The notes: generated by a model not told the origin, from the sequence alone. A DNA stretch of 63,905 nucleotides, filler included, from Octopus bimaculoides (GCF_001194135.2; 6 parts of 6 records of this genome joined end to end with filler, not necessarily neighbours in it), one strand, 5' to 3'. Positions 9,691 to 22,804 are shown, numbered from the whole stretch's first letter. Made by a program: numbers and translations.

Positions 9691-12522
9691 CAGAGAAATA
9701 CTAGGAAAATTATAATAGTGGAAATACTAGATGTAATAGCACGATAGCTACGATGTCATTTCTTCCTTTCTTTATTATATTTCTTCTTTGTATCTCTAAG
9801 TCATGAGGAAAGCTATACAGAAAAATATTGAATGTGCTGAAATGCCAAGCACACTCTGTAAATGAATGTTAAAGAGAGAAGGAAAAGCAACAATGCAAAT
9901 CAGCCTCGAGTAGCTAAAGACCTGAATCAATTCCCTTCGAAGCCTCAATGCAAAATAACTCTTTTCTCTCATCGTCATCATTAATGTTTTCCTTAAAACG
10001 TACTTTCTTTTTATAGCAAACCTACACATAACCATATTGAATGTGATCATTCAGCAAATGTATAAGGTTTTTCATTCAATCTCAGTTATTCTAAATCTAA
10101 ACACTGAATACAGAATATATATGCGACATTTTTCAATCATATAATGTCAAGTTGCTATGCATGTATGTATTCGTATGTTGTTCTTAATTGTTTTGAATTC
10201 TATCAACATTCACACGTCCATGCAATGCTCTCTATATCTAAATATTATTATTAACAAAACCATTATATCTGTTATTAGCTCCTATTAGTAACATCTCAAT
10301 TACAAAGCATCACTCCACTCTCATTTCCGCTATCACTCCCGTCTCCATTATCACAGCAATTTTCTTTACCATTAATTTCGTCGTCTGCTCGATCGACTGC
10401 AACACTATCATTTCTGTCCTCATTACTATCTCTAGTCTCATCATTACCAAAAAAACGCCAGTGTTACCATATTAATTATTCTAGCCAGCAGTATAATCTA
10501 CTACTGCTATAATTTCTACACTTACAACTATTGCTATCATCCTTCCTCAAAAACTAACGCCACTGATTTTTATTACGCGATATTGGTTTCAACGTCTATT
10601 CGATCAATACAAACATTAAAAAAAAAAAAAGACGGGCAAAATAAAATTAAAAAGAAGCAGCAACAACTAAACATAGCAACGCCGCCAACAACTTTACGAT
10701 CGTTTTACAACGTCCAATACACATTTTATTTATTACAGGAGTTTACGTTTTCTATCACCGGCACAGAACAGTAATTTGTTGATTACATTTTTTGCTGTAT
10801 CATAAACTTCATCTACCTCAGGACTTCACAAAAAAACTTTACGCATTTATTCCGAAAGGATAACTAGTATATTCAGATATGTTGAGATTTGAACACAGGA
10901 CGTAAAGGAAATAAAATATAAACGGCATTAAAATTTAGTCGAAACCCTACGATTTCTGTTAATCCAATGCTCTTTCATTATATCATAATTACATAGTCAG
11001 AATGTCAGAATTTAACAATACGCCCCTTTATTGTGAATTAGCACTAGTGCTTATGGTTTAGGAATCTAAGAAGATGACAATATACATTTCTTATTCCTAT
11101 AATAGAGTAATAATTTCCGCAGCGACATTAACTCAATCACTACAACATGTCTGAATGAATTTCATCAGAAAGTGTTTAACCTTATTTGATGCAAATCCTT
11201 ATGTTTTAATGTGATTAGCATCAGATGTAGTGAGACTTATACCATTCAAAAGACCGACAAATGAGTATGTGTCATAATTTCACTGAATTAACAATTGATT
11301 CAAGGTGCAGAATATTTTTCATTCTGTACATTAAAAAACAACCTTATTGTTATGAATATGTACAATGCAAAACTTTATTTTTATTAGAGGTTATTTAACT
11401 TAATCAACCGTAGTATATCAATGATACTAATTTGCTCCAAATAAGACTGATCAAACGTAGAGTTAATTTTGTTGGATTGCTGTATACTTTGTAACTAGGT
11501 TCAAAGGCTACGGATTTTAGGAGAGGATGGTATGGAAAACTTGATGTTCATGACTTTCCAACAGCATTATGTCCTAATTGAAGTAATGTGGTTTCGAACA
11601 GTAATAGAGAGTATGTATGACTATGCCTTTTGAACTAACTGAAATTCCATTTGTTGTGCCACATCACTTATCGCCTTTCGATGGGAATAGTGAATTGTTA
11701 ATTGGGTGCAAATCAGTAGCCATGTAGGAGAAGATAATACATTTTGCAAAGGGGTAAGTGGCATAAGTGATGTGAAATAACTACAGTTATGTATCTAAAG
11801 TTCAGTTTTATATGTACGTATATTACATTAGAGTTAGAACAAATCGGTTATTAAATATTGCATTGGAATAAGGGGAAATTGAACGCTTACAATTTTCGTT
11901 AGTTTCTATTTCCTATTGGGGCTAGTTAACTTCAATTACGTCACAAATGCCTTTCGCAAAATCATCAAAGATCATAACTTCCAATTTTCCCATTTCTCGC
12001 AGCCAATAATATTAAGAACGCATTTGTTAGATATTGCTGATTACATATAATAAAGCAAGCAATCATATATCACACCTGAGTGTAATAGAGAAAATAGCAT
12101 GTTCATTGACAGATATTACATACTCAAACGATTCCTTAACAACATTAATATTCACAAACGCTTTTTAAAATTTTTATAAAAGATGCTGCCACAGTTTATA
12201 TCCAAATTAAGAATCTTCACAATGTATATTTTCACATCGCCATTGCTACTTTTAAAACCGACTACGTTTTTGTTGTCAATATCATGCCTTCAAAAAGATT
12301 TCATTCATAAAGTAGAATGTGTAAAACTGGCCCAGTTGAAGGCTGGTTTAAAGGTCTGTTGCTTATAGAACTGCTAGATCAACCCAAACTGGGGTAGCGG
12401 GTACAAGAGTACTTGCAAAGTAATCGAAATATGTTGGACCCTTACTTTACTACTATCAAAGATCACTATGAGAATACTATTTTCCTATTTACGTTATCTT
12501 ACCTATGCGCTACATACATATA

Positions 12523-17354: not shown

Positions 17355-18110
17355 AAGTTGCCAAGTCGACTGAAGAAGGGAATAATATGCCCGATCCATA
17401 AAAGTGGAAGCGTAGCAGATGCCAAAAGTTATAGGCCTATTTCTCTGACTTTACACAAGCAAATCATGGGACAAATCGTCAGAGGGAAACTAATCATATT
17501 CCTCGAAGAAACGATTATCTGAATGATACCCAGCATGGTTTTCGACCAGTTAGGAGTCGCCTGATACAGACACTAAAGCACTACAACTGGATGCTGAAGC
17601 AGTTACTCAACAACTGAAATGTGGATGTAATATACCCTGACCTACAAAAGCTTTTGCTAAAGTATATCATAGTATGATATGCCACAAACTGGGCGATTTT
17701 GGAATAGCTGGAAACGTTGGAGAGTGGTTACATGACTTTCTGAACGATAGAACTCAGACAGTAGTGACCAATAGAACTACCTCAATGCAAACAGAGGTGG
17801 GAGAGATATTCAGGAATATACTGTCATTGAAAGCTGTACAAATGCCAGTATGGGTCACCACTGTACTTGTGCCAAATATCCCAACAGTACCGTTACGCTT
17901 CAGGACCATTTACTGCAACGGCCTGGGTTTCAAGGGCCCACACTTTTTAATATTCTCCCAAAGGACCTACACAAAGAGGATGTAGGTGTTTTTAAAATAA
18001 GATTGGATGTCTTCCTGTCGAGAGTCCTAGATGAACCTACATAGCAGTAGGAAGCGCAAATGAGAGAGAGCGACATCAAGATCCTTTATTCACCAAATGT
18101 CGCATATCAG
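17355..18110 (+). mobile_element. Decayed, internally deleted CR1/L2-type LINE (RT fragment plus 3' end)
   Basis: Frames read ICPIHKSG..SYRPISLT, QHGFR, DLQKAFAKVYHSMICHKL, WLHDFLNDRTQTVV, then jump to C-terminal FKGP..LFNILPKDL..FKIRLDVFLSRVLDEP; stops and frameshifts. Confidence 0.8.
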
Positions 18111-18981
18111 AAGACGTTCTCACTAATAATAGTGTAGCAAAATATGAGTGCCCCAGCATGGCCTCAGCTATGAGTTGCAACCGATAAAAAGAAAAGTGTT
18201 ATGTCAATCCGATAAAATTTTCACCCTTTGACCTTTCATTTATTTATTGTTAATTTGGAAGTGGCATATAAGGATAATATCCCGTGGAACCCCATAGGCG
18301 GTGGGAGGGAATGACAAAATGCCCATTTGCTTTGTCTATAAGATTAACAACATTCATTATGTAGTAAAGCTGATAAATCAAAAATAATTAATAAAGAGTC
18401 ATCATCTTCTGAATGGTTTTATATTTTATCAGTATATAAAAATTGACACTTTAAAGGATATCCTTTCTCTCTCTCTCTTTCTCTCTCTCTCTTTCTCTCT
18501 CTCTCTGTCTCTCTCTCTCTTTCTCTCTCTCTCTTTTTTCTCTCTCTCTCTCTCCCTCTTTCTCNNNNNNNNNNNNNNNNNNNNNNNNNNNNNNNNNNNN
18601 NNNNNNNNNNNNNNNNNNNNNNNNNNNNNNNNNNNNNNNNNNNNNNNNNNNNNNNNNNNNNNNNNNNNNNNNNNNNNNNNNNNNNNNNNNNNNNNNNNNN
18701 NNNNNNNNNNNNNNNNNNNNNNNNNNNNNNNNNNNNNNNNNNNNNNNNNNNNNNNNNNNNNNNNNNNNNNNNNNNNNNNNNNNNNNNNNNNNNNNNNNNN
18801 NNNNNNNNNNNNNNNNNNNNNNNNNNNNNNNNNNNNNNNNNNNNNNNNNNNNNNNNNNNNNNNNNNNNNNNNNNNNNNNNNNNNNNNNNNNNNNNNNNNN
18901 NNNNNNNNNNNNNNNNNNNNNNNNNNNNNNNNNNNNNNNNNNNNNNNNNNNNNNNNNNNNNNNNNNNNNNNNNNNNNNNNN

Positions 18982-19012
<31 letters not shown>

Positions 19013-19597
19013 AACACATATGCATATTTGTATATCATTCTATATTACAGAAATGCACCTGAACACGCCCACCTGCACACATATATACTTACATAGATAT
19101 GTACATACACAAACATGCAAGCGCGTGTACACACACAAACATAATATTCTAATGGGAAATCTAAAATTAATATCTATAACACAATACATGTTCTTTGCAA
19201 GCAAAACTAAACATTATGAAATAAAGTTTATTGTATCAATAACAAATATTGACTTATCGTAGTTCTGTAATATATCAAGTAGTTCTGGCTTCAAATAACC
19301 TATGAATCATATAGACACATAAATAGGTACTCAAAGGATAATGAAAAAGAATGCAAAACACAAAGAGACAGAAGGAGAATAGAATAGTGCAGCATATTTA
19401 AAAGCGTAAGATCTTAGTATAAATACCATCGATATCATCACTTATTACTACGTTACGACTTTGAACTGGAGATAGGTCGTTCACTAACGACACTCACATT
19501 ATACTCTATTGTAGTTGTGAACAAGATTTTATTTGATTATCTTCCACAAGAAAAACATAAGGTATTTGAGACGGTTCATATTTAAATGCCATTCCAT

Positions 19598-19635
19598 ATA
19601 TTTTCTTTCTCAAAATTTACACAGACATAAATAAA
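19598..19635 (+). promoter_or_regulatory. Possible 3' splice acceptor of a 5'-UTR intron just upstream of the receptor start
   Basis: Pyrimidine tract ttttctttct, then ...tttacacAG (ends 19624), then A-rich acataaataaa leading into the gap that probably hides the ATG. Motif only. Confidence 0.3.
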
Positions 19636-19646
19636 NNNNNNNNNNA

Positions 19647-21084
19647 ATCTTTGGTTTAACTTTAATGCTCATCGGAGTAAGGACAGAAAAAAAGACCTTA
19701 CTGGAAAAGTTATTTAAAGACTATCAGAAGTCTCAGAGACCCGTTTCAAGTGATGACGATATTTTATACGTAGATGTATCACTCGAAGTAAAGAACATTA
19801 TTGAATTTGATGTTGTAAAAGGTTTACTGACAAGTAATCTGATACTTGGATTATCGTGGAATGATGTTAATCTTCATTGGAATGAAGCAAGAGAAAACGT
19901 AAGTTATATTAAAACTGAATTAAAGCATGTGTGGTACCCTAACGTACAAATATGTAATAGCGCTTCAGGAAAATTCACATTTGATGAAGATACAGGAGTC
20001 ACGCTAACAAGTAATGGAAATACTTCTCTCTATATAGACAGAATTGTCAATACTTACTGCAAGGTTAACATTAATAAATATCCTTTTGATGAGCACGAAT
20101 GTGATATATCTGTTTGTTTTCGACACCAGATTAACACGGAAGAAACTTTAAATAATTTCGTGTACAACGTGACATATAATCCAACATATAATCAATGGGA
20201 GTATACATTTAAAGAAAAAGATATTTTAAAAGAGGGCATCATAACAGCCGGTGTTATAGTCCACAGCAAAAGAAAAATTTCTAGTGCGACAATAACCAGC
20301 ATTATACCCCCAATTATGTTAACATTATTAATCATATCTGTCTATCTATTACCAGCTGAATCTGGAGAGAAAGTTTCTGTTGCAATTACTGTTTTTCTCG
20401 CAAATATTGTTTTTCTTTCTGAAACTGAGAAAAAACTGGGAAACAATTCTCGTGAACCTTCTATATATTTAATATATCTTTTANNNNNNNNNNNNNNNNN
20501 NNNNNNNNNNNNNNNNNNNNNNNNNNNNNNNNNNNNNNNNNNNNNNNNNNNNNNNNNNNNNNNNNNNNNNNNNNNNNNNNNNNNNNNNNNNNNNNNNNNN
20601 NNNNNNNNNNNNNNNNNNNNNNNNNNNNNNNNNNNNNNNNNNNNNNNNNNNNNNNNNNNNNNNNNNNNNNNNNNNNNNNNNNNNNNNNNNNNNNNNNNNN
20701 NNNNNNNNNNNNNNNNNNNNNNNNNNNNNNNNNNNNNNNNNNNNNNNNNNNNNNNNNNNNNNNNNNNNNNNNNNNNNNNNNNNNNNNNNNNNNNNNNNNN
20801 NNNNNNNNNNNNNNNNNNNNNNNNNNNNNNNNNNNNNNNNNNNNNNNNNNNNNNNNNNNNNNNNNNNNNNNNNNNNNNNNNNNNNNNNNNNNNNNNNNNN
20901 NNNNNNNNNNNNNNNNNNNNNNNNNNNAATAGGAAACACAGATGAACCAAATATTGAGTCGAAAGATAAAATTCCTTCTAAGAAACGTCGAATAACATAT
21001 ATACAGCTAGACAAAATATTTTTGTTAGCAACTGTTTTGTTCCTTCTACTCTATATCGTTATTGCGTCATCAACCTCTGTTTAG
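19647..21084 (+). CDS. Atypical nicotinic acetylcholine receptor-like Cys-loop channel subunit (cephalopod chemotactile receptor family); no intron in the visible CDS; interrupted by two N gaps
   Basis: ORF 19665-20483 has RPV, SWND..LHWN, VWYP, Cys-loop C-x13-C (CKVNINKYPFDEHEC, 20058-20102), pre-M1 Arg, M1 (IIPPIMLTLLIISVYLLP), M2 (SGEKVSVAITVFLANIVFL) and the start of M3. After the 444-N gap a frame from 20929 reads IGNTDEPNIESKDKIPSKKRRITYIQLDKIFLLATVLFLLLYIVIASSTSV* (M4 with DK motif; TAG at 21082-21084, then TAA TGA). In-frame IFGLTL upstream of Met19665 looks like a signal peptide, so the true ATG is probably in the 10-N gap at 19636-19645. Confidence 0.9.
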
Positions 21085-21252
21085 TAATGAGAAATGAGAG
21101 GTAAATTTGGAATATATTTCATTACATTTATTCTGCACGAGATGAACTGAAAGACTACCTCACATTTAAAATATAAAAATAATCACCAAATATCGTTTAA
21201 TGCAGTACTATTGTACGAATATTTGAGTATTCTGTCATCATCTAATATATTT

Positions 21253-21258
21253 AATAAA
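21253..21258 (+). terminator. Candidate polyadenylation signal of the receptor gene
   Basis: First AATAAA about 170 nt after the stop codon; weak evidence in AT-rich DNA. Confidence 0.3.
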
Positions 21259-21847
21259 CACATGAAATTGCAGTTTCCATTGTTTTAATTGAACAGGAGT
21301 TTTAATTGAACAGGAGTTAACTGAAACAATAAATAAGCCATACAAATATGCAAACCATTGAACACATCAATTTACCATTTTATTGCACTTGAACTTGTTT
21401 ATTTCTCGAACATTCAGAAAATTTGATTGTATGGAGAATGCACTAAAAATGTCACTTATTTGGTGATAATAAGAATTCAACGTTGGACATCACCCGTTAA
21501 ATATAGAATTTATTTCAATAACTATCAGTTCACAGTGTTAAAGATGTTGTGTAAATTGTTCACTTTCTTTTCTTCCCTTTGGATTTGGAGGAAATCTTTT
21601 GTTGTAGTATGAGAATATTTGCGATTAATGTGGCATTAAATGTTGAGATAATTTATGAGAAACACATGAATATCTACTCTCTTTTCGCAAGTTGGATTAT
21701 TTCGGAATTCCTTAGATATATTTGTAGCCCACGTTCTTGGAATGTACTTGACAATAAACACACACATACACACACACATACACACAGACACACACGCACG
21801 CACACACGCNNNNNNNNNNNNNNNNNNNNNNNNNNNNNNNNNNNNNN

Positions 21848-21899
<52 letters not shown>

Positions 21900-22804
21900 T
21901 AAAATTCAATGTGAAAATGATATTATAAACTGAGGTAAACTGGACATGAAAGAATTTCTTTGCGAACTTTCCCACTAATATATTCGAATTGCACTAGATA
22001 TAATAATTTCGTTCTTTAAAGACATTACTCACTGTCAGTTATAACTCACGATTTTAACTTGAATTGAAGCTTATAATTTGTCTTATCTATTTTTCATACT
22101 GGTTTTTTACAGCCTTTATTGATGAATTCAATTCTTTCTCTTCAGTCGAAACGATTACTTTGCAAATGAAAGGCTGGAATTATATTGTGGATGAGATATA
22201 TTTTCCAATGGAATAAATTACGAAGGGTACATTTTACATATAAATTGACTAACACGTTATGACATTTCTTCGATTCCTAATCTTGAGAGTGTTTGAAGAT
22301 ATACGCAATTTCTAAACTTAGCCGCATACTTACAATTTAATTCTTCACGAATGTTACTCCTTTCCATGACCCGTAAATGTCATTCATATTTTACACCAAA
22401 TTACTGCTTTTACCATCAAAATCTACTTCATGTATCACAAGATCTACACAAGTATTGTGGCATAAAGTTTAACTCTTTGAATCACATTTTTTTACGTTAT
22501 GTCATGTATACCAAATATCATAAGAAACACTTGAGATGTTGGATGTCCTGCTAGTAAAAATTCGAATACCACCTTATGTGAAATTGTAAATGAGTAGAAC
22601 AAATGCATTCTGAATATAACAGAGGAGTTGCAATATCACCACCAAGCTAACATTCAAATGATTGTGGAATGAACTGCTACCAATACAATTCATAATTTTA
22701 CAATATTGCGTCTATCTCTCTTCATACGGAAAAAGGTATAACCATCCGGAATTATGTACACAATTATGATATACTATTAAAAAAGACGAATTTCCCACAA
22801 CTTG

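What the first reader, a model, noticed from the sequence alone, without database searches (positions are those of the whole stretch)
19647..21084. Intronless acetylcholine-receptor-like channel lacking the ACh site: candidate octopus chemotactile (taste-by-touch) receptor
Seen: a complete Cys-loop architecture (signal peptide, Cys-loop, M1-M4) with no intron in the visible CDS. The canonical agonist residues are missing: no loop C vicinal Cys-Cys or its two Tyr, loop B Trp149 replaced by Arg, loop A Tyr93 replaced by Cys, and loop D Trp55 replaced by Ile (nAChR numbering, aligned by eye). Established: true nAChR genes are multi-exon and alpha subunits keep these residues. Octopuses have an expanded family of single-exon, ACh-insensitive nAChR derivatives expressed in sucker epithelium that act as contact chemoreceptors for poorly soluble compounds. 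Inference: this is such a neurotransmitter receptor repurposed as a sensory receptor. The family is described; which member this is and what it detects cannot be read from the sequence.
Basis: partly seen in the sequence, partly recalled or inferred. Interest (0 to 1): 0.92.

Follow-up and report, generated by a model that had tools for sequence, protein, structure and literature searches.

The report
Octopus chemotactile receptor gene, gap-broken
This is a gene of the already described octopus "taste-by-touch" receptor family (acetylcholine-receptor relatives that no longer bind acetylcholine), sitting in a tandem cluster in the Octopus bimaculoides reference genome and broken by two assembly gaps, so it is a correct but ordinary rediscovery.

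Summary
The piece is identical to Octopus bimaculoides chromosome CM046615.1. It carries one nAChR-like gene in two visible parts: 19647-20483 (279 codons: part of the signal peptide, the extracellular domain, M1, M2 and the start of M3) and 20929-21084 (51 codons: M4 and the stop).

As written, with 444 N, the two parts are out of frame by one base. Both align collinearly to a single-exon O. sinensis orthologue. There the gap corresponds to 134 nt, and with that length the frames join. The start codon lies hidden in a second, 10-N gap.

The Cys-loop and the cation-pore residues are kept.

In two bootstrapped trees the protein falls inside the clade bounded by octopus CRT1 and squid CRB1 (90% and 99% support). 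Within it, the protein sits in an all-octopus subclade (100%), about 32% identical to CRT1.

Three same-strand, single-exon paralogues lie within 235 kb. RefSeq XP_014778579.1 mis-splices around the gap and loses M3-M4.

Expression, ligand and the gap content were not tested. The family is known, so interest is low.

The parts
19636..19645 (.). 10-N assembly gap that hides the start codon, the first residues (MKL in orthologues) and about 180 nt of 5' flank
   Evidence: The aligned blocks on either side are 12 nt apart in the window but 188 nt apart in O. sinensis, and the orthologue's ATG falls in that interval.
19647..20483 (+). CDS part 1, 279 codons: visible end of the signal peptide (19647-19685), extracellular ligand-binding domain, M1, M2 and the first 10 residues of M3
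   Evidence: Translation; Pfam LBD and TM domains; CRT1 at E 1.5e-41; 100% identical to XP_014778579.1.
20058..20102 (+). Cys-loop, CKVNINKYPFDEHEC (C-x13-C)
   Evidence: Both Cys columns are invariant in the 38-member CR clade, and outside it in 161 and 162 of 162 sequences.
19953..19955 (+). Cys at the loop A Tyr93 position (CRT1 Cys96), probable partner of the Cys at 20115-20117
   Evidence: The two Cys are present together in 34 of 38 CR-clade sequences and absent together in the other 4. The disulfide itself is inferred.
20115..20117 (+). Cys five residues after the Cys-loop (alpha7 Gly147 position, CRT1 Cys150)
   Evidence: Same covariation as above.
20277..20354 (+). M1 (ISSATITSIIPPIMLTLLIISVYLLP)
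   Evidence: Alignment to CRT1 and alpha7.
20367..20429 (+). M2 pore helix with the GEK -1' Glu and the 9' Leu
   Evidence: -1' Glu is present in 37 of 38 and 9' Leu in 38 of 38 CR-clade sequences, as in cationic nAChRs.
20484..20927 (.). Assembly gap (444 N, length estimated) that replaces the rest of M3 and the M3-M4 linker. The expected content is about 134 nt, or 45 codons.
   Evidence: The orthologue has 134 nt here, and that length restores the frame. A nearby partial paralogue has the same 45-residue link with no interruption.
20929..21084 (+). CDS part 2, 51 codons plus TAG: end of the M3-M4 linker and M4 (21007-21066)
   Evidence: Translation; 87% identical to the C-terminus of P0002.
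21253..21258 (+). AATAAA 169 nt after the stop, a possible polyadenylation signal
   Evidence: Pattern match only; not tested.
22113..22216 (+). Spurious terminal exon of RefSeq model XP_014778579.1. The model joins 19665-20451 to this stretch and so bypasses the gap.
   Evidence: The two exons total 891 nt, which gives 296 aa plus a stop and the tail PFIDEFNSF...FPME. That tail has no homology to any CR, and the real M4 at 20929-21084 is left out.

Best explanation
This is a single-exon gene for one subunit of a pentameric, cation-selective Cys-loop channel of the cephalopod chemotactile receptor (CR) family. It belongs to an octopus-only subclade that is a paralogue of CRT1.

Shown here:
- It has the nAChR-like fold domains, the Cys-loop and the M2 cation-pore residues (-1' Glu, 9' Leu).
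- It has lost the acetylcholine aromatic box and the loop C vicinal cysteines.
- It nests between the characterised receptors CRT1 and CRB1.
- It lies in a same-strand tandem array of single-exon paralogues.
- It has an intact positional orthologue in O. sinensis.
- Its transmembrane part is more constrained than its ligand-binding domain.

Inferred:
- Five such subunits, alone or mixed with other CRs, sit in the membrane of sucker sensory cells.
- A contact ligand other than ACh binds at the subunit interface under the short loop C.
- Binding opens the M2 pore and cation entry depolarises the cell.

The pocket is not CRT1's. It has Ile, Tyr and Asp where CRT1 has Tyr58, Trp122 and Phe124, and Arg in loop B. 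The ligand is therefore probably different, and it cannot be read from the sequence.
For: - Identity of the DNA: all 5450 bases match CM046615.1 of GCA_001194135.2.
- PDB search: CRT1 scores 145.7 bits, against 90.6 for Torpedo gamma, 89 for CRB1 and 88 for alpha7. By BLASTP the protein is 32% identical to CRT1 and 27% to alpha7.
- Trees: the CR clade of 38 sequences has 90/100 support and 198/200. The all-octopus subclade of 24 has 100% support in both.
- Residues: Trp55 to Ile, Tyr93 to Cys, Trp149 to Arg, and no loop C Cys-Cys. The Cys-loop, -1' Glu and 9' Leu are kept.
- Single exon: the genes for P0002, P0004, P0009 and P0010 each translate from one contiguous range.
- Tandem array: the genes start at 38,153,401, 38,171,304, 38,362,058 and 38,387,352, all on the + strand.
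- Selection: dN/dS against the orthologue is 0.57 overall, 0.64 in the extracellular domain and 0.33 in the TM part. There is no stop or frameshift in the 330 visible codons.
- Family properties come from the literature: not gated by ACh, gated by poorly soluble molecules, 26 members in O. bimaculoides, homo- and heteropentamers, intronless.
Against: - Forty-five codons and the start codon are unread. The nominal gap (444 nt) is about 310 nt longer than the 134 nt expected, so an insertion, an intron or a lesion cannot be excluded.
- There is no expression or functional evidence for this gene. No read-derived protein in the databases covers it.
- The array contains dead copies nearby.
- dN/dS of 0.57 is only moderately below 1.
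- The pocket carries charged or polar residues (Asp131 and Arg159, fragment numbering) where CRT1 is hydrophobic. The 'poorly soluble ligand' part may therefore not transfer to this gene.
- Loss of ACh residues is not specific to CRs. Only 17 of the 162 non-CR relatives in the set have the Cys-Cys pair.
Confidence: 0.78

Rival explanations
1. It is a dead or dying copy: a unitary pseudogene or a truncated duplicate in a birth-and-death tandem array, whose lesion is hidden in the gap.
For: - The same array holds a 3' partial paralogue (L001 19626-19946) and a frameshifted copy (L001 21333-22265) within 11 kb.
- The gap estimate of 444 nt does not fit the 134 nt expected.
- dN/dS is 0.57.
- No transcript-derived protein was found.
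Against: - The 330 visible codons have no stop or frameshift, despite about 11% nucleotide divergence from an orthologue that is itself intact.
- The TM part has dN/dS 0.33.
- All structurally essential residues are kept: the four Cys, the YPFD motif, GEK and 9' Leu.
- Both gap flanks are frame-compatible with the orthologue's length.
Confidence: 0.12
2. It is a CR-clade subunit whose role is not that of a stand-alone chemotactile receptor. For example, it could be an obligate accessory subunit in heteromers, or a receptor used in another tissue or for another class of stimulus (polar, charged, metal or pH).
For: - CRs form heteromers, and only some work as homomers.
- CR transcripts are also enriched in the hectocotylus.
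- Asp, Asn or Glu at the CRT1-Phe124 position occurs in 24 of 24 subclade members, and His or Tyr at position 122 in 21 of 24.
- CRT1's Ca2+-permeation residue Glu104 is Thr here.
Against: Nothing in the sequence shows this. Pocket residues are known to diversify among CRs. The loop B alignment is ambiguous by one residue.
Confidence: 0.08
3. It is a canonical nAChR non-alpha (structural) subunit of a neuronal or muscle acetylcholine receptor, as the RefSeq name 'acetylcholine receptor subunit alpha' suggests.
For: - The automated names of this protein and its relatives are all nAChR subunit names.
- Non-alpha subunits also lack the loop C Cys-Cys pair.
Against: - It lies inside the CRT1 + CRB1 clade with 90-99% support.
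- It has lost Trp55 as well as Trp149. From what is established about nAChRs, complementary non-alpha subunits normally keep Trp55 (loss shown).
- Its orthologue is a single-exon gene of 375 residues with a short M3-M4 linker. From established knowledge, nAChR genes are multi-exon and have long linkers.
Confidence: 0.02

Closest known systems
Octopus bimaculoides CRT1 (chemotactile receptor for terpenes 1; PDB 8EIS, 9E6B)
   Same: - Same family clade and same domain order.
- Cys-loop, the extra Cys pair (CRT1 Cys96 and Cys150), a short loop C without Cys-Cys, the GEK / 9' Leu pore, and a small protein size.
- It is the best PDB hit, at E 1.5e-41.
   Different: - Only 32% identical, and in a different subclade.
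- The CRT1 ligand-contact residues Tyr58, Trp122, Phe124, Ser169 and Phe192 read Ile, Tyr, Asp, Thr and Ile-or-gap here.
- Loop B Ala152-Leu153 is replaced by Arg plus either His or a deletion.
- The Ca2+-ring residue Glu104 is Thr.
Squid CRB1 (PDB 8EIZ)
   Same: It is a member of the same 38-sequence CR clade, it lacks the ACh residues, and it has the same pore motif.
   Different: It scores 89 bits, no better than nAChRs. CRB1 lacks the extra Cys pair, with Tyr at both positions. It belongs to the decapodiform branch.
O. sinensis 'acetylcholine receptor subunit delta-like' (P0002, 375 aa) and O. bimaculoides XP_014778580.1 (P0004)
   Same: - P0002 is the positional orthologue: 81% amino-acid identity, with flanks 88-89% identical.
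- P0004 is the next intact gene in the array, 67% identical.
- Both are single exon and full length.
   Different: They are intact in their assemblies, whereas the window copy is interrupted by two gaps. P0002 has one extra codon in the N-terminal region and ends 4 residues earlier.
Canonical nicotinic acetylcholine receptor subunits (e.g. human alpha7, Torpedo gamma)
   Same: Same superfamily fold, Cys-loop, M1-M4 topology and cation-selective M2.
   Different: It is 27% identical to alpha7. The aromatic box and the vicinal Cys are absent, loop C is shorter, the linker is much shorter and the gene has one exon.

Membership tests
Cephalopod chemotactile receptors (CRs) | nAChR-like Cys-loop channel subunit (ligand-binding domain plus 4-TM channel domain) | tested here: met
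   Pfam PF02931 at E 3e-31 and PF02932 at E 4e-7. The Cys-loop, M1, M2 and M4 are visible; M3 is partly in the gap.
Cephalopod chemotactile receptors (CRs) | Falls inside the clade defined by experimentally characterised CRs (octopus CRT1, squid CRB1), apart from canonical nAChRs | tested here: met
   Two neighbour-joining analyses were run, using different alignments and distances. The 38-member clade has 90/100 and 198/200 support, and alpha7 and Torpedo gamma lie outside it. No maximum-likelihood tree could be run.
Cephalopod chemotactile receptors (CRs) | Loss of the acetylcholine-coordinating residues (loop A Tyr, loop B Trp, loop C Tyr-Cys-Cys-Tyr, loop D Trp) | tested here: met
   The residues are Cys, Arg, a gap and Ile respectively. 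This is not specific on its own, because many non-CR molluscan relatives also lack them.
Cephalopod chemotactile receptors (CRs) | Intronless coding region | tested here: met
   - The 279 + 51 visible codons are uninterrupted.
- The O. sinensis orthologue and three paralogues each translate from a single contiguous range.
- The only 'intron' is the one the RefSeq model uses to skip the gap.
- Caveat: see the next row.
Cephalopod chemotactile receptors (CRs) | Continuous, intact ORF across the unread 444-N and 10-N gaps | not testable with these tools
   Both flanks are frame-compatible with the orthologue's 134 nt, and a neighbouring partial paralogue has an unbroken 45-residue link. The bases themselves are not in any source searched.
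Cephalopod chemotactile receptors (CRs) | Lies in a tandem array of CR paralogues | tested here: met
   Four same-strand, single-exon genes lie within 235 kb of CM046615.1, along with two decayed copies.
Cephalopod chemotactile receptors (CRs) | Cation-permeable pore | tested here: met
   The M2 -1' Glu (GEK) and 9' Leu are conserved. Conduction itself was not tested.
Cephalopod chemotactile receptors (CRs) | Expressed in sucker (or hectocotylus) chemosensory cells | not testable with these tools
   No expression data are accessible. The literature gives this for the family only.
Cephalopod chemotactile receptors (CRs) | Not gated by ACh; gated by poorly soluble contact ligands | not testable with these tools
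   This is a family property from the literature. It needs electrophysiology.
CRT1-type receptor (terpenoid / beta-carboline / progesterone pocket) | Hydrophobic inner pocket Tyr58, Phe124, Ala152, Leu153, plus Trp122 and Phe192 | tested here: not met
   - The window has Ile, Asp, Arg and His-or-deletion at the first four positions.
- It has Tyr and Ile-or-gap at Trp122 and Phe192.
- It is 32% identical to CRT1 and lies in a separate subclade.
- It is therefore not a CRT1 orthologue.
Canonical nAChR subunit | Agonist-site aromatic box (principal or complementary face) and placement among canonical subunits | tested here: not met
   Trp55, Tyr93, Trp149 and loop C Cys-Cys are all absent. The protein is placed in the CR clade.

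The most novel reading that the evidence does not exclude
The window gene's all-octopus subclade (24 sequences in my set) may be a functionally distinct class of CR. An acidic or amide residue (Asp, Asn or Glu) sits at the CRT1-Phe124 position in 24 of 24 members. His or Tyr sits at the Trp122 position in 21 of 24. A charged or small residue sits at the loop B Trp149/Ala152 position. Such a pocket would suit polar, cationic, metal or pH-dependent stimuli rather than the greasy ligands of CRT1. If true, octopus taste-by-touch would cover a second chemical space through a separate receptor lineage.
Probability: 0.2. Interest if true: 0.55.

Novelty: already known. Interest (0 to 1): 0.22.

Why it matters
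The finding shows that the scan can recognise a repurposed neurotransmitter receptor from raw sequence. However, the CR family was described from this very genome (26 members), two members have solved structures, and this gene is already a RefSeq entry.

Three things are practically useful:
- RefSeq model XP_014778579.1, named 'acetylcholine receptor subunit alpha', is an artefact. It splices round an assembly gap and loses M3-M4. Catalogues built on it will miscount or mis-align this CR.
- The gap and start-codon problem is now defined precisely enough for a single PCR to settle it.
- The subclade signature (a loop E Asp and a loop A-loop B Cys pair) gives testable mutagenesis targets for anyone de-orphanising this large, uncharacterised branch of octopus CRs.

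Tried and rejected
- AlphaFold2 on the 279-residue fragment with the 16-sequence alignment gave mean pLDDT 42 and pTM 0.27. That is too poor to use, so I ran no fold search. The proposed Cys-Cys disulfide could not be checked in three dimensions.
- A protein search with a composite query spanning the gap found no read-derived protein that closes it. It returned only P0018, P0001 and P0020.
- The primary CR papers (van Giesen 2020, Allard 2023, Kang 2023) and the Current Biology primer are not held. The supplement that lists reference CR accessions is not held either. No paper mentions XP_014778579. I therefore could not say which numbered CR this is, nor confirm that it is counted among the 26.
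- Pfam on the single upstream ORFs gave nothing useful. Only a frame-stitched version gave a sub-threshold RVT_1 hit.
- Rfam found nothing in the piece.
- I rejected the idea that the CR-like 3' fragment 8 kb downstream is the misplaced content of the gap. It is only 88% identical to the overlapping window sequence, so it is a paralogue.
- I rejected the use of 'lacks ACh residues' as sufficient evidence for a CR, because most non-CR relatives in the set lack them too.

Full report
**Where the piece comes from.** The finding's piece (17355-22804) matches Octopus bimaculoides chromosome CM046615.1 (assembly GCA_001194135.2) at all 5450 positions, N runs included. It contains four N runs: 18565-18981, 19636-19645, 20484-20927 and 21810-21847.

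**What is in the sequence.**
- One frame is open from 19647 to 20483, 279 codons running from IFGLTLMLIGVRT to EPSIYLIYLL.
- After the large gap, a frame starting at 20929 reads IGNTDEPNIESKDK...LDKIFLLATVLFLLLYIVIASSTSV* and stops at 21084.
- Pfam finds the neurotransmitter-gated channel ligand-binding domain (E 3e-31) and the start of the transmembrane domain.
- Visible features are the end of a signal peptide, the Cys-loop CKVNINKYPFDEHEC, M1, M2, ten residues of M3, and M4.
- The rest of M3 and the M3-M4 linker are not visible.

**The gap test.**
- Taken literally, 444 N is 148 codons. The upstream frame then runs into NRKHR* just after the gap, and M4 lies in the +1 frame.
- The length of the gap is only an estimate, so I used the positional orthologue. 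O. sinensis P0002 (375 aa, 81% identical) is encoded by one uninterrupted 1128-nt ORF (L002 10001-11128).
- blastn gives three collinear blocks at 88-89% identity: window 19316-19633 with L002 9501-9820, 19646-20483 with 10009-10849, and 20928-21286 with 10984-11340.
- The large gap therefore corresponds to 134 nt in the orthologue. With 134 nt the two window frames join exactly, with 45 codons missing.
- A 3' partial paralogue 8 kb downstream (L001 19626-19946) has the same 45-residue M3-M4 link with no interruption.
- The small 10-N gap corresponds to 188 nt in the orthologue and contains its ATG. Orthologues and paralogues start MKLIFGLTLMLIG. The ATG at 19665 that RefSeq uses is therefore internal to the signal peptide.
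- I found no sequence from reads that covers either gap. Continuity is well supported but not shown. The excess of about 310 nt in the gap estimate leaves room for an insertion.

**The annotated model is an artefact.** RefSeq XP_014778579.1 (P0001, 296 aa, 'acetylcholine receptor subunit alpha') joins 19665-20451 to 22113-22216. This adds a tail, PFIDEFNSF...FPME, with no homology to any relative, and it omits the real M4 at 20929-21084.

**The residue claims.** I checked them in a MAFFT alignment of 201 sequences, in a smaller L-INS-i alignment and in HMMER/BLAST pairwise alignments to human alpha7.
- Loop D Trp55 is Ile, loop A Tyr93 is Cys and loop B Trp149 is Arg. Loop C is shorter and has no Cys-Cys and none of its Tyr residues.
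- The two Cys-loop cysteines, the M2 -1' Glu (GEK) and the 9' Leu are kept. The pore therefore looks like that of a cationic nAChR.
- Loss of the ACh residues is not diagnostic by itself. Among the 162 non-CR relatives in the set, only 17 have the Cys-Cys pair and 73 have the loop B Trp.

**Family placement.**
- Against solved structures, the best match is octopus CRT1 (146 bits, E 1.5e-41). It is well ahead of Torpedo gamma (91 bits), squid CRB1 (89) and human alpha7 (88). Identity is 32% to CRT1 and 27% to alpha7.
- I collected the 150 best representatives from an exhaustive HMMER search. To these I added the close octopus hits, further members of their clusters, and the CRT1, CRB1, alpha7 and Torpedo gamma sequences as printed.
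- I built two neighbour-joining trees with bootstrapping. The first used Kimura distances on 200 sequences and 259 columns. The second used BLOSUM-score distances on an L-INS-i alignment of 147 sequences and 274 columns.
- Both trees recover the same 38-sequence clade containing CRT1, CRB1 and the window protein (90/100 and 198/200). Alpha7, Torpedo gamma and all other relatives fall outside it.
- Inside that clade the window protein sits in a 24-sequence subclade (100% support in both trees). Every named member of the subclade is from O. bimaculoides, O. sinensis or O. vulgaris. The subclade is sister to the CRT1 group with weak to moderate support (17% and 66%).
- A recent phylum-wide survey likewise resolves a cephalopod CR clade inside the nAChR superfamily and calls the intronless structure characteristic of CRs.

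**Genomic organisation.** The window gene starts at 38,153,401. P0004 (XP_014778580.1) starts at 38,171,304, P0009 at 38,362,058 and P0010 at 38,387,352. All are on the + strand of the same chromosome, and the last three each translate from a single contiguous range. Between the window gene and P0004 lie a 3' partial copy and a frameshifted copy. This is a birth-and-death tandem array of single-exon genes, as described for CRs.

**Constraint.** Against the orthologue, dN/dS is 0.57 over 326 codons, 0.64 in the extracellular domain and 0.33 in the transmembrane part. There is no stop or frameshift in the 330 visible codons at about 11% nucleotide divergence. That fits a working channel with a fast-evolving ligand-binding domain, which is the pattern reported for CRs. 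It is not strong proof of function.

**How it most likely works.**
- Shown: the sequence has the parts of a cation-selective pentameric channel subunit without an ACh site.
- Inferred from the family: subunits assemble as homo- or heteropentamers in sucker sensory cells, a contact ligand binds at the orthosteric interface, and cation influx follows.
- The CRT1 numbering in my alignment is validated by the published contact residues Tyr58, Glu104, Trp122, Phe124, Ser169 and Phe192. At those positions the window protein has Ile, Thr, Tyr, Asp, Thr and Ile or a gap.
- The Asp (Asp, Asn or Glu in 24 of 24 subclade members) and the Ile are robust to the choice of alignment.
- Loop B is ambiguous by one residue. 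MAFFT pairs the window's His with CRT1 Leu153. HMMER and BLAST delete Leu153 and pair the His with His154.
- Either way, CRT1's hydrophobic Ala152-Leu153 is replaced, and the pocket is more polar than CRT1's. So the ligand is probably different. Loss of the Glu104 ring suggests lower Ca2+ permeability than CRT1 (inference).

The Cys that replaces Tyr93 co-occurs with a second Cys five residues after the Cys-loop, at the alpha7 Gly147 position (CRT1 Cys96 and Cys150). Both are present in 34 of 38 CR-clade sequences and both are absent in the other four, including CRB1. This covariation suggests a loop A-loop B disulfide. I could not check it in three dimensions, because the AlphaFold model was unusable (pLDDT 42).

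**Verdict.**
- The interpretation as a candidate chemotactile receptor is supported by every sequence-level test available.
- Expression, ligand and the unread 45 codons remain open.
- The family is well described, and it was described from this genome. The gene is already annotated, though wrongly. I therefore rate it as already known and of low interest.
- One modestly novel possibility is that this large octopus-only subclade has a chemically different pocket.

Noticed in passing
window 17355-17810 (+), continuing to about 18050: A decayed reverse-transcriptase fragment of a retrotransposon. The motifs YRPISL, QHGFRPVRS and NVDVIY..KAF are spread over three frames with several stops. A frame-stitched translation hits Pfam RVT_1 at E 5.7e-6 (26.6 bits, below the 29.6 cut-off). 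It runs off the piece's left edge.
   Followed up: partly
window 18463-18564, 18982-19010, 21758-21807, 21848-21896: Microsatellites (TC)n, (AT)n and (CA)n directly abut the N runs at 18565-18981 and 21810-21847, which probably explains those gaps. The gap inside the CDS (20484-20927) is not flanked by simple repeats.
   Followed up: partly
window 19665-20451 joined to 22113-22216: RefSeq XP_014778579.1 is a gap-bypassing model with a GT..AG 'intron' of about 1.66 kb. It lacks M3-M4 and carries an unrelated 34-residue tail.
   Followed up: yes
L001 19626-19946 (CM046615.1, about 8 kb downstream of the gene, outside the piece): A 3' partial CR paralogue running from M3 to the stop, 88% nucleotide identity to the window's 3' part. 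Homology begins abruptly at ...REASIYLIYLL, and the upstream sequence is unrelated. It is a truncated duplicate, not the missing gap content.
   Followed up: partly
L001 21333-22265 (about 10 kb downstream, outside the piece): Another CR-like copy, 66-71% identical to P0002. Its homology is split over three reading frames, so it is probably a pseudogene in the array.
   Followed up: no
L002 18622-19035 and 20186-21126 (O. sinensis): The gene next to the orthologue is modelled as a spliced 379-aa product (probably P0003). It appears to join an N-terminal partial duplicate (residues 1-138) to a second, nearly full copy 1.1 kb further on. This 'intron' may be another annotation artefact.
   Followed up: no
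window 19953-19955 and 20115-20117: A covarying extra cysteine pair (alpha7 positions 93 and 147). Both are present in 34 of 38 CR-clade sequences and both absent in 4, including squid CRB1. It suggests a CR-specific loop A-loop B disulfide.
   Followed up: partly
search result: Many of the best database representatives are 600-1470 residues long with 2-5 matched stretches. These are probably gene models that fuse neighbouring single-exon receptor genes in tandem arrays.
   Followed up: no
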